A stretch of DNA of 63,936 bases, the filler included, from Octopus bimaculoides (Eukaryota): NCBI RefSeq assembly GCF_001194135.2. It is 8 parts of 7 records of this genome, joined end to end, with 100 filler letters (N's around TTAATTAATTAA, not from the genome) between each part and the next. Parts side by side here need not be neighbours in the genome. Positions count along the whole stretch, not along the records: positions 53,215 to 57,845 come from NC_068985.1; 7 more parts are not named here. One strand, 5' to 3'. Position 1 is the stretch's first letter, and the number at the start of each line of letters is the position of its first letter. The translations under genes were made by a program, and so were the position numbers. Below are positions 53,215 through 57,845 of the stretch, piece by piece. The notes beneath the pieces are model-generated. The model saw only the letters and a program-made list of their open reading frames with translations. It did not search any database and was not told the DNA's origin.

Positions 53215-53468
53215 GGAGGCGACGGAAGGCCCGTAGGATCCTCCGACGAAGGGGTAGGGTGGCAGGGTGGAAACGGAGTGGGAAGGGGGTATGGTTAGGG
53301 GATTGATGTGGGGGAGGAGAGAGGGCGGTGATGCGGTCGATTCGACGAGCGCGGGCAAGGGCGGATTGGACAAGGTGGGTGGGGTATCCTCGATGCATGA
53401 ACAGACGAGCAAGATACTGGGACTGGGTCTCGAATTCCTGGTCCAGGCTGCACAAATGTTAGAGGCGG
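53215..53468 (-). mobile_element. Penelope-like element RT thumb/linker fragment, GC-rich
   Basis: CSLDQEFETQSQYLARLFMHRGYPTHLVQSALARARRIDRITAL...PFPLRFHP matches the PLE pattern ICS..EF...L...F..RGYP...I..A..KA...R..LL...PFV..YHP. Truncated by a gap. Confidence 0.8.
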
Positions 53469-53515
53469 AGGAGAGAGAGAGAGAAAGAGCGAGAGAGAAA
53501 AAGAGCGAGAGAGAA

Positions 53516-53554
<39 letters not shown>

Positions 53555-53984
53555 AAGAAAGAGAGATGTATATGTTTACATATAGATGTATATGTACACG
53601 TATATGTATAGATATAGATATAGATCTATATGCATACATGTATATGTATATATATATAGATGTACATGTAATATGTACACATATATACATATATATACAT
53701 GCATACAGATATCTATNNNNNNNNNNNNNNNNNNNNNNNNNNNNNNNNNNNNNNNNNNNNNNNNNNNNNNNNNNNNNNNNNNNNNNNNNNNNNNNNNNNN
53801 NNNNNNNNNNNNNNNNNNNNNNNNNNNNNNNNNNNNNNNNNNNNNNNNNNNNNNNNNNNNNNNNNNNNNNNNNNNNNNNNNNNNNNNNNNNNNNNNCTTA
53901 CAGCTGTGCCTGTCACCTGTATGGTGAGGAATCCTACATTGGGGAGTAGTAACGACTAGGCTAGGGTAGCTGACTGATTATCAT

Positions 53985-54882
53985 GATCATTCGTTTTTGG
54001 CTTTCCTGTAGCTTTGCTCTCTTTTACAAACCCAGTGAACATACATATATTTCCTATTTCAAAGAAATTCAGACAATACATATTACACACAAGTTAAAAA
54101 GATTCCCAACAATTCAACTTCTCTGCTTGACATTAATATACCCACCCCCAATAGGGGCCTTAACTCCCACATTTTAGAGCTCCATTTTTCAGGAGCAAAA
54201 TCCTTTTGGGTCCATGTAGTGTCTTAGACCAAAAAAATTTTTAACTTCTTGCATAGTTCGAGCCCACAATAATATCATATCTCCTCCACTATTTCAGTAT
54301 TACGTGTCAAAAGCGAAACAATAACATCACTCTACTGTAATGTCAGATATTTTCACTTTAACACTGAAACTATTCCACTATTTCAGTATTACCTGTCAAA
54401 AGTGAAACAGTAACATATCGCTACTGTAAATTCAAATACTTTCACTTTAATACTTTCAATTTCATACTGAAACTATAAAAGTGAGACTATACTCTCACAT
54501 ATATACAAGCATACTATAAGACCCAAGTTAAAAACATTCCCAATAATTCAATTTCTGTGGCTGACATTAACACCCCCACCCCCAATAGGGGCCTTCATTC
54601 CTACATTTTAGAGCTCCTTGAGCTCCATTTTTCAGGAGCAAAATCCTTTTTACAGGTTCCAGAAGACTGAAATTTTGGAATATGCGCATAAAGATCAATA
54701 GTATGGGATACATGTCTCATGATTAGAGTTTTTTTAGGGTGTGTAAAAGAGGGAAAGAACCCTTATGTGCAATTTTCATGAAATTCGAATCATATGTATT
54801 CCAGTTCCTTACAGAAAATATAACACAAAATTCTCATTCTTCAATTGCATGTAACACGGGCAACGCCGGGTATCTCTGCTAG
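53985..54882 (+). mobile_element. Non-autonomous Helitron-like element with internal direct repeats
   Basis: 3' end acacgggcaacgccgggtatctctgCTAG|T (CTAG at 54879-54882). Internal ~120-bp direct repeat (about 54088-54207 and 54520-54650) and 89-bp tandem (ccactatttcagtattac at 54286 and 54375). The 5' boundary is approximate. Confidence 0.6.
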
Positions 54883-54883
54883 T

Positions 54884-55029
54884 TATCATTATCATTGTTC
54901 AGGTCACTGCTTGCTATCCAATATACGGAATCTTGGGGTTAAGAGCATGGGCTACTAACCCCAAGATTCCAAGTTCAATTCCAAGCAGTGACCTGAACAA
55001 TAATAATAATAATGATAATAATAATAATG

Positions 55030-55072
<43 letters not shown>

Positions 55073-55226
55073 GAACAACAACAACATCGAAAAATACCTT
55101 AGGAACAAGAACCCAGGTTCGAAATTTCCCCAAGACACCTGATGAAGCCGAAACGGTGTGTTAACAACAAACAAGATGAGGACAAATATCTGTCAAATGT
55201 AAATAATGTACATAATTCCTCATCTC
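54884..55226 (+). mobile_element. Non-autonomous element with a palindromic tRNA-like head, (AAT)n spacer and HHR relic; probably related to a Penelope-like pLTR
   Basis: Perfect 20-bp (54894-54913/54982-55001) and 15-bp (54927-54941/54956-54970) inverted arms; A/B-box-like ggttaagagc...agttcaattcc; HHR relic at 55134; terminal tacataattcctcatctc is also found at 61106-61123. Confidence 0.55.
55134..55162 (+). pseudogene. Relic minimal hammerhead with stem II deleted
   Basis: GACAC CUGAUGA AGCC GAAAC GGU GUGUU: stem I gacac/gtgtt and both cores are present, but only 4 nt separate the cores and position 16.1 is G. Confidence 0.55.
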
Positions 55227-55234
55227 CAGTAGAA

Positions 55235-55650
55235 CCCATTTATTATCACCACTCACTATTCAGTCCAAAAAAAGTTCATTCGTGATACGTAACAGCAAAG
55301 AAGAGCACACATTCATTTTCTGCACATGATTAGACTTGGAAAGTATGTGAGGAAACCACTGACCCAATTTGTTCTTTTTTCCAATGGTATGCCGGTGTCG
55401 ATGAATGGTTGAATGACCACATCCAAGCTTTTCTGCAAGTTCCTCAACAGTTACAATGGGATTTAGTTCCATCAGGAGATCCTCATCAAGCTCTACAGAT
55501 CTTCCAGTATTGTCTTCTAGACTGTAGTTTCCGGCTCAGAATTTCTGGAACCACTATTGACACTGGCTTATGCTTATTGTCCGATCCCCATATACTGCAT
55601 TAATATTCCTCCCACTTTCCATTGCATCGTTGCTTTTATTGAATTCATAA
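55235..55650 (-). mobile_element. Mariner transposase N-terminal fragment (pseudogene)
   Basis: GRNINAVYGDRTISISQCQ*WFQKF*AGNYSLED...GRSVELDEDLLMELNPIVTVEELAEKLGCGHSTIHRH...KLGQWFPHILS...VCSSLLLRITNELFLD contains the two HTH motifs and a WVPHEL-like motif, with in-frame stops. Confidence 0.9.
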
Positions 55651-55932
55651 AGTAAAATATACCAAATATGCTCCTTTGCCACTTCCATTATAGCTTTGAA
55701 AAAATAACTTAAAATCGAACTGCACTCTTAAAAAATTGCACTAAGAGTAAGGACAAGGTAAAATTACTACCTACTTTAAGAGCAAGTTGATACAGGTAGT
55801 CTATCCCATCCCCCTCCAACTTTTAGTTCATGCAATTGAAAAATCTGCTAAAATGCTATAATTAATGCACATGAATGAAAATGTATACACCAACAGGGAC
55901 CATAATTGTCTGAAAAATACCAACAGAGAATT

Positions 55933-55984
55933 CTAAAGACTGATGCGTCAGTTTTGGCAATTTCTGTTGCCACCATCAGTTAAG
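55933..55984 (-). ncRNA. Mutated copy of the same type I hammerhead, probably inactive
   Basis: Minus strand reads CUUAA CUGAUGG U GGCAA-CAGAAA-UUGCC AAAAC UGA-CGCA-UCA GUC UUUAG, with A9>G, G12>A and one stem I mismatch. Stem II is perfect. Confidence 0.8.
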
Positions 55985-56290
55985 TCACCTTGGTGTTCAG
56001 CTATTTCCAGGCCTGTTTCTCAAATAGTATATATATTTTTGTCATCCAAATTAATGGATGATTTAGTGATTCACTAATATGTATACACAAAATTAATGAA
56101 AACAGCAAGTTGCAATGTTTCACCAAAAAGGAGAATTATAATTGTCATTAAATGTGACTAGGGTGTTAAAAAACACCTACATTGCTAGAAAAAAGAACAT
56201 TAACAAATCGCTAAATCATCCATGAATTTGGAAGATGAAAACATATATGTTAATAGAGAAAGGTCCGGAAATAGCCAAACACCGAGCTGG

Positions 56291-56342
56291 CTTAACTGAT
56301 GATGGCAAAGGAAATTGCTGAAACTGATGCGTCAGTCTTAAG
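56291..56342 (+). ncRNA. Type I hammerhead ribozyme, near-canonical
   Basis: CUUAA (stem I 5') CUGAUGA U GGCAA-AGGAAA-UUGCU (stem II, G.U closing pair) GAAAC UGA-UGCG-UCA GUC | UUAAG (stem I 3'). All core nucleotides are present; predicted cleavage is after C56337. Confidence 0.88.
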
Positions 56343-56765
56343 AATTCCCAATCTGTATTTTTCAGACAATTATGGTCCTTGTTAGTGTATATGTTTTCAT
56401 TCATGTGCATTAACTACAGCATTAAAGCATTTTAGTTCTTATTTCTAGCAATGTGCTTTTTAACACCCTAGTCACATTCAGTGACAATTATAATTCTTTT
56501 TGTTGAAACATTGCAGCCTGCTGTTTACACTAATTTTGTGTATATACATTTGTGAATTGCTAAATCATCCAGTAATTTCTGATGCGTCAGTCTTAAGAAT
56601 TCCTAATCAGTATTTTTCAGACAATTATGGTCCTTGTTAGTGTATGTGTTTTCATTCATGTGCATCAACTACAGCATTAGAGCAATGTATGTATTTTTTA
56701 ACACCCTAGTCACATTTAGTGACAATTATAATTATTTTTTTGGTGAAACAGTGCAAACCTGCCTG

Positions 56766-56837
<72 letters not shown>

Positions 56838-57133
56838 NNNNNNNNNNNNNNNNNNNNNNNNNNNNNNNNNNNNNNNNNNNNNNNNNNNNNNNNNNNNNNN
56901 NNNNNNNNNNNNNNNNNNNNNNNNNNNNNNNNNNNNNNNNNNNNNNNNNNNNNNNNNNNNNNNNNNNNNNNNNNNNNNNNNNNNNNNNNNNNNNNNNNNN
57001 NNNNNNNNNNNNNNNNNNNNNNNNNNNNNNNNNNNNNNNNNNNNNNNNNNNNNNNNNNNNNNNNNNNNNNNNNNNNNNNNNNNNNNNNNNNNNNNNNNNN
57101 NNNNNNNNNNNNNNNNNNNNNNNNNNNNNNNNN

Positions 57134-57173
<40 letters not shown>

Positions 57174-57798
57174 GATGGGCTTCTTTCAGTTTCCATCTAC
57201 CAAATCCACTCACAAGGCTTTGGTTGGCCCAAGGCCATAGTGGAAGACACTTGCCCAAGGTGCCACATAGTGGAACTGAACCCAGAACCATGTGGTAGGG
57301 AAGCAAGCTTCTTATTGCACAGCTGCTTCTGCACATATATTTGCATGTGTGTATATGTATATGAATGTATGTGCATATATATACATCAACAGCAATATCA
57401 AAATCAAGTCAAATGGAAATTGTAGTTGTGACCCCCATACCGGTAGCATGTAAAAAGCACCATCCAAATATGGTCGATGCCAGCTCCTCTGGCCCCTGTG
57501 CTGGTGGCACGTAAAAAATACCCACTACACTCTCAGAGTGCCAGATTAGATTTGGGCCTGGTGCAGCCTCCTGGCTTCCTAGACCCCAGTCGAACCATCC
57601 AACCCATGCCAGCATGGAAAACGGACGTATGATGATGATATATATATATAGGTGCAAGAGTGGGTGTGTGGTAAGTAACTTGCTTACCAACCACATGGTT
57701 GCGTGGCAACTTGGGCAAGTGTCTTCTATTATAGCCTCGGGCCAACCAAAGCTTTGTGAGTGGATTTGGTAAACAGAAACTGAAAGAAGCCCGTCGTA

Positions 57799-57845
<47 letters not shown>

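What the first reader, a model, noticed from the sequence alone, without database searches (positions are those of the whole stretch)
55847..56763. Hammerhead-ribozyme 'retrozyme': ~350-nt non-coding monomers in a head-to-head tandem array with one near-canonical HHR
Seen: a 349-bp unit is repeated on plus (56206-56763), and about one unit lies inverted on minus (56198-55847). The unit contains a complete type I hammerhead at 56291-56342 with a 5-bp stem I, CUGAUGA-U, a 5-bp stem II, GAAAC, a 5-bp stem III and a GUC site. Combining the two full-length HHR copies gives a fully canonical ribozyme: the plus copy has a G.U at 10.1-11.1, while the minus copy has A9G and G12A but a perfect stem II. 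Established: metazoan non-LTR retrozymes are tandem monomers of a few hundred nt with type I HHRs that yield circular RNAs, and Penelope-like elements carry HHRs in their pLTRs. Inference: this is a non-autonomous, circRNA-producing family mobilised by PLEs, and PLE RT relics lie 2-3 kb away on both sides. I cannot tell whether this family has been described.
Basis: partly seen in the sequence, partly recalled or inferred. Interest (0 to 1): 0.9.

Follow-up and report, generated by a model that had tools for sequence, protein, structure and literature searches.

The report
Decayed hammerhead-ribozyme repeat in octopus-like DNA
A 349-base non-coding repeat, present as one inverted and about two direct copies, carries what is most likely a genuine but now decayed self-cleaving hammerhead ribozyme of the kind linked to Penelope-like retroelements; it is probably a new member of a known class, and this copy is a fossil.

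Summary
A 349-nt, 33% GC, non-coding unit occurs as one exact inverted monomer (55849-56198, minus), one full direct unit (56197-56545) and one direct unit with deletions (56546-~56770). The array ends in (TATC)n(TA)n. A complete type I hammerhead motif lies at 56291-56342.

Rfam's hammerhead models do not detect it. A field-style descriptor does, and so does a covariance model I built from four experimentally validated retrozyme ribozymes (16.2 bits, E~0.0015, top hit). Nothing in 82-103 kb of octopus-like control DNA matches as well.

Complementary CpG decay (TG in one copy, CA in the other) places C11.1-G12 and a palindromic CGCG loop 3 in the common ancestor. Together with the unpaired U after A9 and a 5-bp helix I, these are published hallmarks of Penelope-type hammerheads that my search did not require.

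The layout (partial tandem, adjacent inverted copy, microsatellite at the 3' end, junction inside a truncated mariner end) matches Penelope-type insertions.

This locus is dead. Only one intact ribozyme exists per strand, so no unit-length circle can form. I could retrieve no other copies, found no covariation, and found no RT in the piece. Verdict: probable relic of a retrozyme-like element; new member of a known kind; modest interest.

The parts
55849..56198 (-). Inverted complete monomer of the 349-nt unit (unit positions 239-349 then 1-238); 85% identical to unit A. Its 3' end points outward and is joined to a truncated mariner end at 55848/55849.
55933..55984 (-). Decayed hammerhead copy. 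A9G is at 55973 and G12A at 55955; stem I has a U.U mismatch; stem II is perfect with G10.1-C11.1; loop 3 is CGCA; the would-be C17 is 55938.
   Evidence: (5.2 bits, E 3.4)
56197..56545 (+). Direct unit A, 349 nt, 33.5% GC. It is the only unit with a complete hammerhead.
56291..56342 (+). Type I hammerhead motif. Stem I 56291-95 with 56338-42; CUGAUGA 56296-302; unpaired U 56303; stem II 56304-08 with 56315-19 (G.U closing pair); loop 2 56309-14; GAAA 56320-23; stem III 56323-27 with 56332-36; loop 3 UGCG 56328-31. Predicted cleavage is after C56337.
   Evidence: (16.2 bits, E 0.0015, top hit)
56546..56770 (+). Direct unit B. It lacks 94 nt (equivalent to 56230-56323 of unit A: stem I 5' strand, core, stem II, GAAA) and a further 17-21 nt between two AGCA repeats. 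It ends at about unit position 325, in the microsatellite.
56579..56597 (+). Orphan 3' part of the ribozyme in unit B: stem III hairpin, GUC and UUAAG, with no catalytic core upstream.
   Evidence: (D11)
56763..56837 (.). (TATC)n then (TA)n microsatellite at the 3' end of the direct array, followed by the assembly gap 56838-57133. (TA)n is a published preferred target of Naiad PLE insertions, and canonical PLEs show a general microsatellite bias.
55344..55848 (-). Flanking Mos1-type mariner relic (HTH_48 domain at about 55527-55676). Its 5' inverted terminal repeat is cut about 24 nt short exactly where the inverted monomer begins, which marks an insertion or rearrangement junction.

Best explanation
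This locus is a dead, CpG-decayed insertion of a roughly 349-nt non-autonomous, non-coding retroelement of the retrozyme / Penelope-like element (PLE) derivative kind. The unit carried a self-cleaving type I hammerhead.

How the family most likely works (inferred from published models). Multimeric transcripts are cut by the hammerhead after GUC. The inferred palindromic helix III suggests two neighbouring ribozymes act as a dimer. Unit-length RNAs can then be ligated into circles and copied by a PLE reverse transcriptase / GIY-YIG endonuclease at a nicked target.

How this locus most likely arose (inferred). Two opposed cDNAs were primed from the two sides of a staggered break, next to a (TA)n/(TATC)n microsatellite and inside an older mariner end. 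The left cDNA ran for exactly one unit. The right cDNA ran for about 1.9 units. They met head-to-head at 56197-56200.

What is shown. The anatomy, the motif and its rarity in control DNA, the PLE-type hallmarks, the CpG-decay reconstruction at two sites, the truncated mariner junction, and the absence of coding capacity.

What is inferred. Self-cleavage, circular RNA, mobilisation by PLEs and twin priming.

The locus itself is now inert. The minus copy has lethal core changes, unit B has lost the core, and unit A has a G.U pair at 10.1-11.1.
For: 1. Motif. It has a complete CUGAUGA / GAAAC / GUC core with three helices in type I topology.
- It is the top hit of a covariance model built only from four experimentally validated retrozyme hammerheads: 16.2 bits, E~0.0015 (sequences).
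- In 82.5 kb of octopus-like control DNA the best scores were 14.9 and 14.0 bits, both with broken cores.
- The descriptor gave 0 hits in 103 kb of control DNA and 11 hits in 20000 simulated pieces.

2. Features not demanded by my search that the literature lists as marks of real PLE-type hammerheads.
- Both copies have an unpaired nucleotide between A9 and 10.1. A U at this position raised the trans-cleavage rate 3-4-fold relative to the natural extra A in a viroid hammerhead.
- Helix I is 5 bp with no obvious loop 1.
- The minus copy has G10.1-C11.1.
- Loop 3 is inferred to have been palindromic.

3. CpG decay.
- Unit A and the minus copy differ by 38 transitions and 14 transversions.
- There are 5 aligned TG/CA pairs, 5 CG/TG or CG/CA pairs, and no conserved CpG.
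- One TG/CA pair falls on positions 11.1-12, so the ancestor had the canonical C11.1-G12.
- Loop 3 (UGCG versus CGCA) goes back to CGCG. That makes ACUGACGCGUCAGU a perfect palindrome able to form a 14-bp intermolecular helix III.

4. Unit properties. The unit is 349 nt, 33.5% GC and non-coding. The longest ORF is 64 aa, with no homologues and no Pfam domain. This fits the roughly 300-bp, under-45%-GC retrozyme description.

5. Periodicity. The same unit-to-unit junction is present in the direct array and inside the inverted copy. The template therefore had a 349-nt period, either multimeric or circular.

6. Architecture. The locus has a partial tandem, an immediately adjacent inverted copy at its 5' end, and a (TA)n microsatellite at the 3' end. 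It also has two hammerheads about 300 bp apart on opposite strands. These match published PLE insertion structures.

7. Left junction. The left end of the array lies inside a mariner terminal repeat that six related copies show to be about 24 nt longer.
Against: - Rfam 15 reports no hammerhead family at E<=10, even in a 96-nt search. It gives only weak C/D-snoRNA-like hits.
- My own model's score is modest, only 1.3 bits above the best control hit. At that score, hundreds of chance hits are expected across a genome of a few gigabases.
- Only two full motif copies exist. There is no compensatory change, and the motif is no better conserved (44/52, 85%) than the unit as a whole (85%).
- The predicted lowest-energy fold of the 52-mer pairs the CUGAUG core with CGUCAG (-9.9 kcal/mol) rather than forming the ribozyme (-6.0).
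- The circular monomer of unit A is not unusually self-paired (z = -1.1; the minus copy gives -3.0).
- No other copy was found. This covers 123 kb of octopus-like DNA, a 21-mer scan of JGI metagenome contigs that include octopus-like contigs, viral and prokaryotic collections, and a six-frame protein-database search.
- The two outward 3' ends lie at different unit positions (238 and about 325). Neither lies at the ribozyme cleavage site.
- The right-hand target flank is hidden by the microsatellite and a gap, and the missing mariner tip was not found.
- Helix II is 5 bp, not the 7-8 bp of typical PLE minimal hammerheads. Helix III is longer than in either minimal or canonical metazoan type I motifs.
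- The PLEs documented for Octopus in the literature I read are Naiads, which lack hammerheads.
Confidence: 0.65

Rival explanations
1. The repeats are fragments of an autonomous Penelope-like element: solo or truncated pseudo-LTR pieces produced by heavy 5' truncation. On this view there is no independent non-autonomous retrozyme family.
For: - The hammerhead has PLE-type hallmarks: an extra nucleotide after A9, a short helix I and G10.1-C11.1.
- Most PLE-type hammerheads occur as single or opposed motifs attributed to truncated PLEs, including pairs 100-700 bp apart on opposite strands.
- The inverted-plus-tandem layout and the microsatellite association are PLE features.
Against: - The unit-to-unit junction recurs with a 349-nt period in the direct array and inside the inverted copy. 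The repeating template was therefore 349 nt long, not 3-4 kb.
- No RT or GIY-YIG remnant exists in any frame of the piece.
- Non-LTR retrozymes are now argued to be pLTR derivatives anyway, so the two readings overlap.
Confidence: 0.15
2. The motif is a chance hammerhead look-alike inside an ordinary AT-rich short repeat, such as a small satellite or a locally duplicated and inverted segment, with no ribozyme history.
For: - Rfam hammerhead models are silent.
- The custom-model score is only 16.2 bits, against 14.9 for the best control hit.
- At roughly 5e-4 hits per 4 kb, hundreds of chance descriptor hits are expected in a genome of a few gigabases.
- There is no covariation and no extra conservation of the motif.
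- An 8-nt direct repeat AACUGAUG (56294-301 and 56322-329) supplies both the core and part of stem III, and supports a competing fold.
- A review warns that relaxed hammerhead searches mostly give false positives.
Against: - The hit falls inside a 349-nt tandem/inverted, low-GC, non-coding unit, which is the known habitat of metazoan type I hammerheads.
- It carries features that were not searched for: the extra U, G10.1-C11.1, and a loop 3 that CpG-decay logic restores to a palindrome (about 1 in 16 by chance).
- Both CpG-decay sites resolve to the ribozyme-compatible state.
- The control DNA gave no descriptor hit.
Confidence: 0.12
3. The unit is a DNA-level foldback or MITE-type element, or a small RNA gene such as a C/D box snoRNA. 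On this view the UGAUGA and CUGA boxes are what was noticed, and the inverted arrangement reflects terminal inverted repeats.
For: - There are weak C/D-snoRNA model hits over 56294-56342 (15.9 and 12.4 bits).
- The locus contains long inverted arms (I14-I21).
- A genuine foldback element lies nearby at 57134-57835.
Against: - The snoRNA scores are far below the gathering thresholds (40-50 bits), and the box spacing and terminal stem do not fit.
- The inverted arms are whole permuted units, not terminal repeats around a distinct core. The direct array continues through a unit junction.
- No target-site duplication or transposase link was found.
Confidence: 0.04

Closest known systems
Metazoan non-LTR retrozymes (Cervera & de la Pena 2020, PMC7229834), for example the 350-390-bp mussel repeats; also axolotl/newt satellite 2, Schistosoma Sm-alpha and coral repeats
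   Same: - Short (about 350 bp), low-GC, non-coding unit in head-to-tail copies.
- One type I hammerhead per unit with the CUGANGA / GAAAY / RUH core.
- A palindromic loop 3 (inferred ancestor), which suggests dimeric action.
- A mollusc host.
   Different: - Only about 2.6 units are present and only one intact ribozyme. The locus fails the criterion of two consecutive complete hammerheads.
- Helix I is 5 bp with no recognisable loop 1, rather than 6 bp with loop-loop contacts.
- There is an unpaired U after A9.
- Helix III is 4-5 bp rather than 1-2 bp.
- Circular RNA, copy number and self-cleavage are untested.
- The circular monomer of unit A is not markedly self-paired.
Hammerheads of Penelope-like elements (min-HHRs in pLTRs; Cervera & de la Pena 2014, PMC4209133)
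   Same: [quoted passage not shown]
- G10.1-C11.1 (minus copy and inferred ancestor).
[quoted passage not shown]
- Palindromic 15.2-16.2 and loop 3.
- Opposed motif pairs a few hundred bp apart.
   Different: - Helix II is 5 bp, not 7-8 bp.
- Helix III is a real 4-5-bp stem, whereas min-HHRs essentially lack it.
- No RT/GIY-YIG ORF is associated within the piece.
- The repeat period is 349 nt, not about 3 kb.
Penelope-like element insertion architecture (Craig et al. 2021, bioRxiv 10.1101/2021.04.23.441226)
   Same: - A partial tandem in which a 5'-truncated copy precedes the next copy.
[quoted passage not shown]
- A microsatellite at the insertion, with (TA)n on the 3' side.
[quoted passage not shown]
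   Different: - The two outward 3' ends are at different unit positions.
- The 30-40-bp 'tail' could not be assessed.
- The PLEs named there for Octopus (Naiads) lack hammerheads.
L1 twin priming (target-primed reverse transcription from both nicks, giving inversions); recalled from my own knowledge, not checked here
   Same: Two opposed segments have their 3' ends outward and their 5' ends joined internally with a 2-4-nt overlap.
   Different: - It is described for LINE-1 with poly(A) ends.
- Here there is no poly(A), and the template appears periodic or circular.

Membership tests
Hammerhead ribozyme, type I | Conserved catalytic core: C3 U4 G5 A6 N7 G8 A9, G12 A13 A14, A15.1-U16.1, H17 | tested here: met
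   All positions are canonical in the plus copy at 56296-302, 56320-23, 56336 and 56337. The minus copy has A9G and G12A.
Hammerhead ribozyme, type I | Three helices around the core, with helix I open and helices II and III closed by loops | tested here: met
   There are three 5-bp helices; 96.7% of the 30 pair cells form standard pairs across the two copies. However, the ribozyme fold (-6.0 kcal/mol) is not the predicted lowest-energy fold (-9.9).
Hammerhead ribozyme, type I | Recognition by curated Rfam hammerhead covariance models | tested here: not met
   No hammerhead family appears at E<=10 in searches of 4631, 931 or 96 nt.
Hammerhead ribozyme, type I | Similarity in sequence and structure to experimentally validated retrozyme hammerheads | tested here: inconclusive
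   Custom model R1 (4 seed sequences) scores 16.2 bits with a rough E of 0.0015, and the motif is the top hit of the piece. The best control hits in 82.5 kb scored 14.9 and 14.0 bits, so the margin is small.
Hammerhead ribozyme, type I | Helix-preserving covariation among copies | tested here: inconclusive
   Only two copies are available. There are 0 compensatory changes, 1 one-sided change (G-C versus G.U) and 1 broken pair.
Hammerhead ribozyme, type I | Self-cleavage after H17 in Mg2+ | not testable with these tools
   This needs in vitro transcription of the monomer and the dimer.
PLE-type hammerhead (Cervera & de la Pena 2014) | Unpaired nucleotide between A9 and 10.1 | tested here: met
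   U56303 in the plus copy and the equivalent U in the minus copy.
PLE-type hammerhead (Cervera & de la Pena 2014) | Highly conserved G10.1-C11.1 pair | tested here: met
   G-C in the minus copy. The plus copy has G.U. The TG/CA pair at positions 11.1-12 places CG in the ancestor.
PLE-type hammerhead (Cervera & de la Pena 2014) | Short helix I (4-5 bp) and large helix II (7-8 bp) | tested here: inconclusive
   Helix I is 5 bp, which fits. Helix II is 5 bp, which does not.
PLE-type hammerhead (Cervera & de la Pena 2014) | Minimal or absent helix III, with palindromic 15.2-16.2 and loop 3 | tested here: inconclusive
   Helix III is a real 4-5-bp stem, so it is not minimal. Loop 3 is UGCG or CGCA today, and is palindromic CGCG only in the ancestor inferred from CpG decay.
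PLE-type hammerhead (Cervera & de la Pena 2014) | Location in the terminal repeat of an element that encodes RT and GIY-YIG endonuclease | tested here: not met
   No RT or GIY-YIG domain appears in any of the six frames of the piece. The sequence beyond the piece is not genome.
Non-LTR retrozyme (Cervera & de la Pena 2020; Li et al. 2026) | Tandem unit of 150-450 bp, GC below 45%, non-coding | tested here: met
   The period is 349 nt and GC is 33.5%. The longest ORF is 64 aa, with no homologue or domain.
Non-LTR retrozyme (Cervera & de la Pena 2020; Li et al. 2026) | [quoted passage not shown] | tested here: not met
   Unit A is complete. Unit B has lost 94 nt including the core. The third copy is on the other strand and is mutated.
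Non-LTR retrozyme (Cervera & de la Pena 2020; Li et al. 2026) | Many dispersed genomic copies (dimers to multimers) | not testable with these tools
   No eukaryotic genome search is available. There were 0 copies in 123 kb of octopus-like DNA and none in the other collections. That sample is too small to set a useful bound.
Non-LTR retrozyme (Cervera & de la Pena 2020; Li et al. 2026) | Highly self-paired monomer RNA; abundant circular RNA | tested here: inconclusive
   Circular folds are 54-58% paired, with z = -1.1 (unit A) and -3.0 (minus copy). Expression cannot be tested.
PLE-type insertion architecture | Partial tandem with an adjacent inverted copy at the 5' end; microsatellite target | tested here: met
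   The order along the locus is inverted monomer, 5'-truncated direct unit, next unit, then (TATC)n(TA)n. This was compared with the published descriptions.
C/D box snoRNA | C and D boxes brought together by a terminal stem; score above the Rfam gathering threshold | tested here: not met
   The best hits are 15.9 bits (threshold 40) and 12.4 bits (threshold 50).

The most novel reading that the evidence does not exclude
Cephalopods harbour a live family of about 350-nt retrozyme-like elements. Their hammerhead is a hybrid between the canonical retrozyme type and the Penelope minimal type: an extra U after A9, a short helix I, and a long palindromic helix III that acts as a dimer. The family yields abundant ribozyme-made circular RNAs in octopus tissues. 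The exact one-unit inverted copy here would then be the footprint of a single round of target-primed reverse transcription on a circular RNA, with twin priming. That would be direct structural support for the circular-template, PLE-mobilised model of retrozyme spread.
Probability: 0.25. Interest if true: 0.5.

Novelty: new member of a known kind. Interest (0 to 1): 0.3.

Why it matters
If confirmed genome-wide, this would add cephalopods to the animals that carry hammerhead-bearing non-autonomous retroelements. In the 8.3 million papers searched, none pairs hammerhead ribozymes or retrozymes with cephalopods beyond a passing mention.

It would also supply a motif intermediate between retrozyme and Penelope-type hammerheads. 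That bears on the recent proposal that retrozymes derive from Penelope terminal repeats.

The locus shows an insertion anatomy that fits reverse transcription of a periodic or circular template: an exact monomer in inverted orientation, a head-to-head join, a microsatellite, and a junction inside an older transposon.

The locus itself is an inert fossil, and the class is already known in molluscs. The finding is therefore incremental rather than surprising.

Tried and rejected
- **Rfam, three scales**. No hammerhead was reported. The miRNA hits in the piece are low-complexity TA/TG artefacts, and the C/D snoRNA hits are far below threshold.

- **Finding other copies.**
  - A 21-mer scan of metagenome contigs gave one chance bacterial hit, L001.
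  - Viral and prokaryotic genome scans gave nothing.
  - A protein search with the 64-aa ORF gave nothing. A concatenated six-frame translation of unit A and its junction (56197-56600) also gave nothing.
  - I used the neighbouring mariner relic to pull 123 kb of octopus-like DNA (Octopus sinensis CM016864.1 and JGI samples 3300002938 and 3300002931). It held no copy of the unit.

- **An idea I rejected: the mariner inserted at a TA at the end of the inverted monomer.** Six related mariner copies show the terminal repeat continues about 24 nt further. In the piece the mariner is therefore truncated, not bounded by its own target duplication. The missing tip is not elsewhere in the window.

- **A second deletion in unit B as an element boundary.** It is more simply slippage between two AGCA repeats.

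- **A possible 7-nt target duplication** (GTCTATC at about 55799 and 56764). It is too weak to use.

- **CUGAUGA-AGCC-GAAAC at 55141-55156.** There is no room for helix II, and it scores 5.3 bits. It is not a ribozyme.

- **Tandem Repeats Finder** does not see the 349 period because of the deletions.

- **tRNA scan.** It found none.

- **PLE coding relics in the piece.** There are none.
Full report
**1. What is in the sequence**

The piece (53215-57845) is a mosaic of repeats and microsatellites with two assembly gaps. Between 55849 and about 56770 a 349-nt unit occurs three times.

- Unit A, 56197-56545 on the plus strand, is complete.
- Unit B follows directly at 56546. It lacks 94 nt (equivalent to 56230-56323 of unit A) and a further 17-21 nt lying between two AGCA repeats. 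It runs into (TATC)n(TA)n at about 56763-56770, followed by the gap at 56838-57133.
- The third copy is inverted, from 56198 down to 55849. It is 85% identical to unit A.
  - It covers unit positions 239-349 and then 1-238. That is exactly one unit in a permuted register.
  - It therefore contains the same unit-to-unit junction as the direct array.

The unit is 33.5% GC. Its longest ORF is 64 aa. That ORF and a concatenated six-frame translation of unit A have no homologues in a 5.8-billion-protein collection. No frame of the piece carries a Pfam domain except a mariner HTH_48 domain outside the repeat.

**2. The hammerhead motif**

At 56291-56342 the plus strand reads CUUAA-CUGAUGA-U-GGCAA-AGGAAA-UUGCU-GAAA-CUGA-UGCG-UCAG-U-C-UUAAG.

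- This gives three 5-bp helices in type I topology, a fully canonical core and a GUC cleavage site, with C17 at 56337.
- The inverted copy (reverse complement of 55933-55984) keeps all helices except one U.U mismatch in helix I. It has A9G and G12A.
- Unit B retains only stem III, GUC and UUAAG, at 56579-56597.

**3. Is the motif more than chance?**

- My descriptor hit 11 of 20000 Markov-1 simulated pieces of the same size and composition.
- A looser descriptor using the field's criteria (CUGANGA / GAAAY / RUH) recovered the validated coral and mussel ribozymes. It missed both axolotl ones, gave no hit in 103 kb of octopus-like control DNA, and gave one hit in the piece.
- Rfam's curated hammerhead models report nothing at E<=10, even when given only 96 nt.
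- I therefore built a covariance model from the four retrozyme hammerheads whose self-cleavage was shown experimentally: coral, mussel and two axolotl (sequences).
  - The candidate is the top hit of the piece at 16.2 bits, with a rough E of 0.0015.
  - In 82.5 kb of control DNA the best scores were 14.9 and 14.0 bits, both with defective cores.
- The motif is thus rare but not overwhelming. On motif strength alone, a genome of a few gigabases would hold hundreds of such hits.

**4. Features I did not search for**

Cervera and de la Pena (PMC4209133) argued that their Penelope-element hammerheads are real because they share features outside the descriptor. [quoted passage not shown]

- Both copies here have the extra nucleotide (U). 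In a viroid hammerhead, changing the natural extra A to U at this position raised the trans-cleavage rate 3-4-fold.
- Helix I is 5 bp.
- The inverted copy has G10.1-C11.1.

The remaining differences are explained by CpG decay.

- Over the whole unit the two copies differ by 38 transitions and 14 transversions.
- There are five aligned TG/CA dinucleotide pairs, five CG/TG or CG/CA pairs and no shared CpG. This is the classic signature of methylated CpGs decaying independently in each copy.
- One TG/CA pair is UUGCUGAAAC versus UUGCCAAAAC. The ancestor therefore had CG at positions 11.1-12, which is the canonical C11.1 and G12.
- Loop 3 (UGCG versus CGCA) resolves to CGCG by the same logic. That makes ACUGACGCGUCAGU a perfect palindrome able to form a 14-bp intermolecular helix III, the dimeric mode typical of metazoan type I hammerheads.

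Only position 9 (A or G) stays unresolved. These points raise my belief that the ribozyme was once real to roughly 0.8.

**5. Evidence against a functioning or selected ribozyme**

- There is no compensatory change.
- The motif is no better conserved than the rest of the unit: 44 of 52 positions, 85% in both cases.
- The lowest-energy fold pairs the CUGAUG core with CGUCAG (-9.9 kcal/mol) instead of forming the ribozyme (-6.0). The cause is an 8-nt direct repeat, AACUGAUG.
- Helix II (5 bp) and helix III (4-5 bp) fit neither the minimal Penelope type nor the canonical retrozyme type exactly.
- The circular monomer of unit A is not unusually structured (z = -1.1; the inverted copy gives -3.0).

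**6. Architecture and surroundings**

The left end of the inverted monomer abuts a Mos1-type mariner relic at 55344-55848 on the minus strand. I retrieved six related mariner copies from Octopus sinensis chromosome CM016864.1 and from two JGI samples. They show that the family's terminal repeat continues about 24 nt beyond the point where it stops in the piece. The repeat array is therefore joined inside an older mariner end. This is an insertion or rearrangement junction, not the mariner's own target duplication, which was an idea I first held and then dropped. The missing tip is not elsewhere in the window.

Both arms have their 3' ends pointing outward: one into the mariner, the other into the microsatellite. 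Their 5' ends meet at 56197-56200 with a 2-4-nt overlap.

Published Penelope-like element (PLE) insertions look the same. They are heavily 5'-truncated partial tandems, often with an inverted copy immediately at the 5' end, and they show an insertion bias for microsatellites; (TA)n is the preferred target reported for Naiads. [quoted passage not shown] Penelope-type hammerheads also occur as opposed pairs 100-700 bp apart; here the two motifs are about 300 bp apart.

My reading, which is inference, is that two opposed cDNAs were primed from the two sides of a staggered break on a 349-nt periodic or circular RNA. The left cDNA stopped after exactly one turn.

Weak points in this reading:
- The two 3' ends lie at different unit positions (238 and about 325), and neither is the cleavage site.
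- The right-hand flank is hidden by the microsatellite and the gap.

**7. What it is and what it is not**

The best fit is a relic insertion of a non-autonomous, retrozyme-like derivative of Penelope-type elements. Retrozymes are defined as short, low-GC tandem units each carrying a type I hammerhead. They are transcribed, self-cleaved, circularised and presumably copied by PLE enzymes. A 2026 preprint derives them from Penelope terminal repeats.

The locus meets the criteria for size, composition and non-coding nature. It fails the working criterion of two consecutive complete hammerheads, so it cannot release a unit-length RNA today. Copy number, expression and cleavage could not be tested.

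The host is octopus-like. The foldback element at 57134-57835 and the mariner both have multiple 75-86% identical relatives in Octopus sinensis DNA.

**8. Novelty and score**

Retrozyme-like repeats are reported in mussels and in many invertebrate phyla. In the paper library searched, no paper connects hammerheads or retrozymes with cephalopods beyond a passing mention. The Octopus PLEs named there (Naiads) lack hammerheads. If the family proves real genome-wide, it is a new member of a known kind with a somewhat intermediate ribozyme architecture. Interest is 0.3.

Confidence:
- Relic of a retrozyme-like, PLE-derived element: 0.65.
- Truncated terminal repeats of an autonomous PLE: 0.15.
- Chance motif in an ordinary repeat: 0.12.
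- Foldback element or small-RNA gene: 0.04.

Noticed in passing
55344-55848 (minus strand); HTH_48 at about 55527-55676: A Mos1-type mariner relic whose reading frame holds two in-frame stops. Its 5' terminal repeat is about 24 nt short compared with six related copies, one in Octopus sinensis CM016864.1 and five in JGI contigs. All six alignments also stop at 55344-55356.
   Followed up: yes
55135-55159 (plus strand): A small hairpin, ACACC-UGAUGAAGCCGAAAC-GGUGU, contains CUGAUGA and GAAAC only 4 nt apart. It looks hammerhead-like but has no room for helix II, and the custom model scores it at 5.3 bits (E 3.1). It lies just downstream of a GGTTCGAAA, T-arm-like stretch.
   Followed up: partly
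54895-55075: Nested perfect inverted repeats: 19 nt (TTGTTCAGGTCACTGCTTG with CAAGCAGTGACCTGAACAA) enclosing a 13-nt hairpin (ATCTTGGGGTTAG-like with CTAACCCCAAGAT). A long (AAT)n microsatellite follows. This could be a MITE or a hairpin-RNA-like element. ARAGORN finds no tRNA.
   Followed up: no
57134-57835: A foldback element with 133-nt terminal inverted repeats (90% complementary), flanked on both sides by (TA)n. Many 69-86% identical fragments occur in 21 kb of Octopus sinensis DNA (L002), so it belongs to a very abundant cephalopod repeat family.
   Followed up: partly
54081-54617: Local direct repeats of another element: 54081-54183 with 54515-54617 (85%), 54177-54207 with 54620-54650 (100%), and 54285-54365 with 54374-54454 (86%, spacing 89).
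   Followed up: no
53560-53716, 57320-57400, 57790-57845: All the 'significant' Rfam miRNA hits (mir-1277, mir-297, mir-466, mir-3149) fall on TA/TG-rich low-complexity DNA and are far below the gathering scores. They are artefacts of base composition.
   Followed up: partly
L003-L007 (JGI samples 3300002938 and 3300002931): Two JGI 'metagenome' samples hold contigs of up to 58 kb that carry octopus-type mariner relics. They are probably host (cephalopod-like) DNA inside metagenome data. L005 and L006 appear to be the same locus from the two samples.
   Followed up: partly
56294-56301 and 56322-56329 (plus strand): An 8-nt direct repeat, AACTGATG, supplies both the CUGAUGA core and the 5' arm of stem III. 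It lets CGUCAG pair with either copy, which gives a competing fold 3.9 kcal/mol more stable than the ribozyme fold.
   Followed up: yes
55849-56545 (inverted copy versus unit A): There is strong CpG depletion (observed/expected 0.11-0.41). The two copies share five TG/CA aligned pairs and no CpG, which implies that this repeat was methylated in the germline for a long time.
   Followed up: yes
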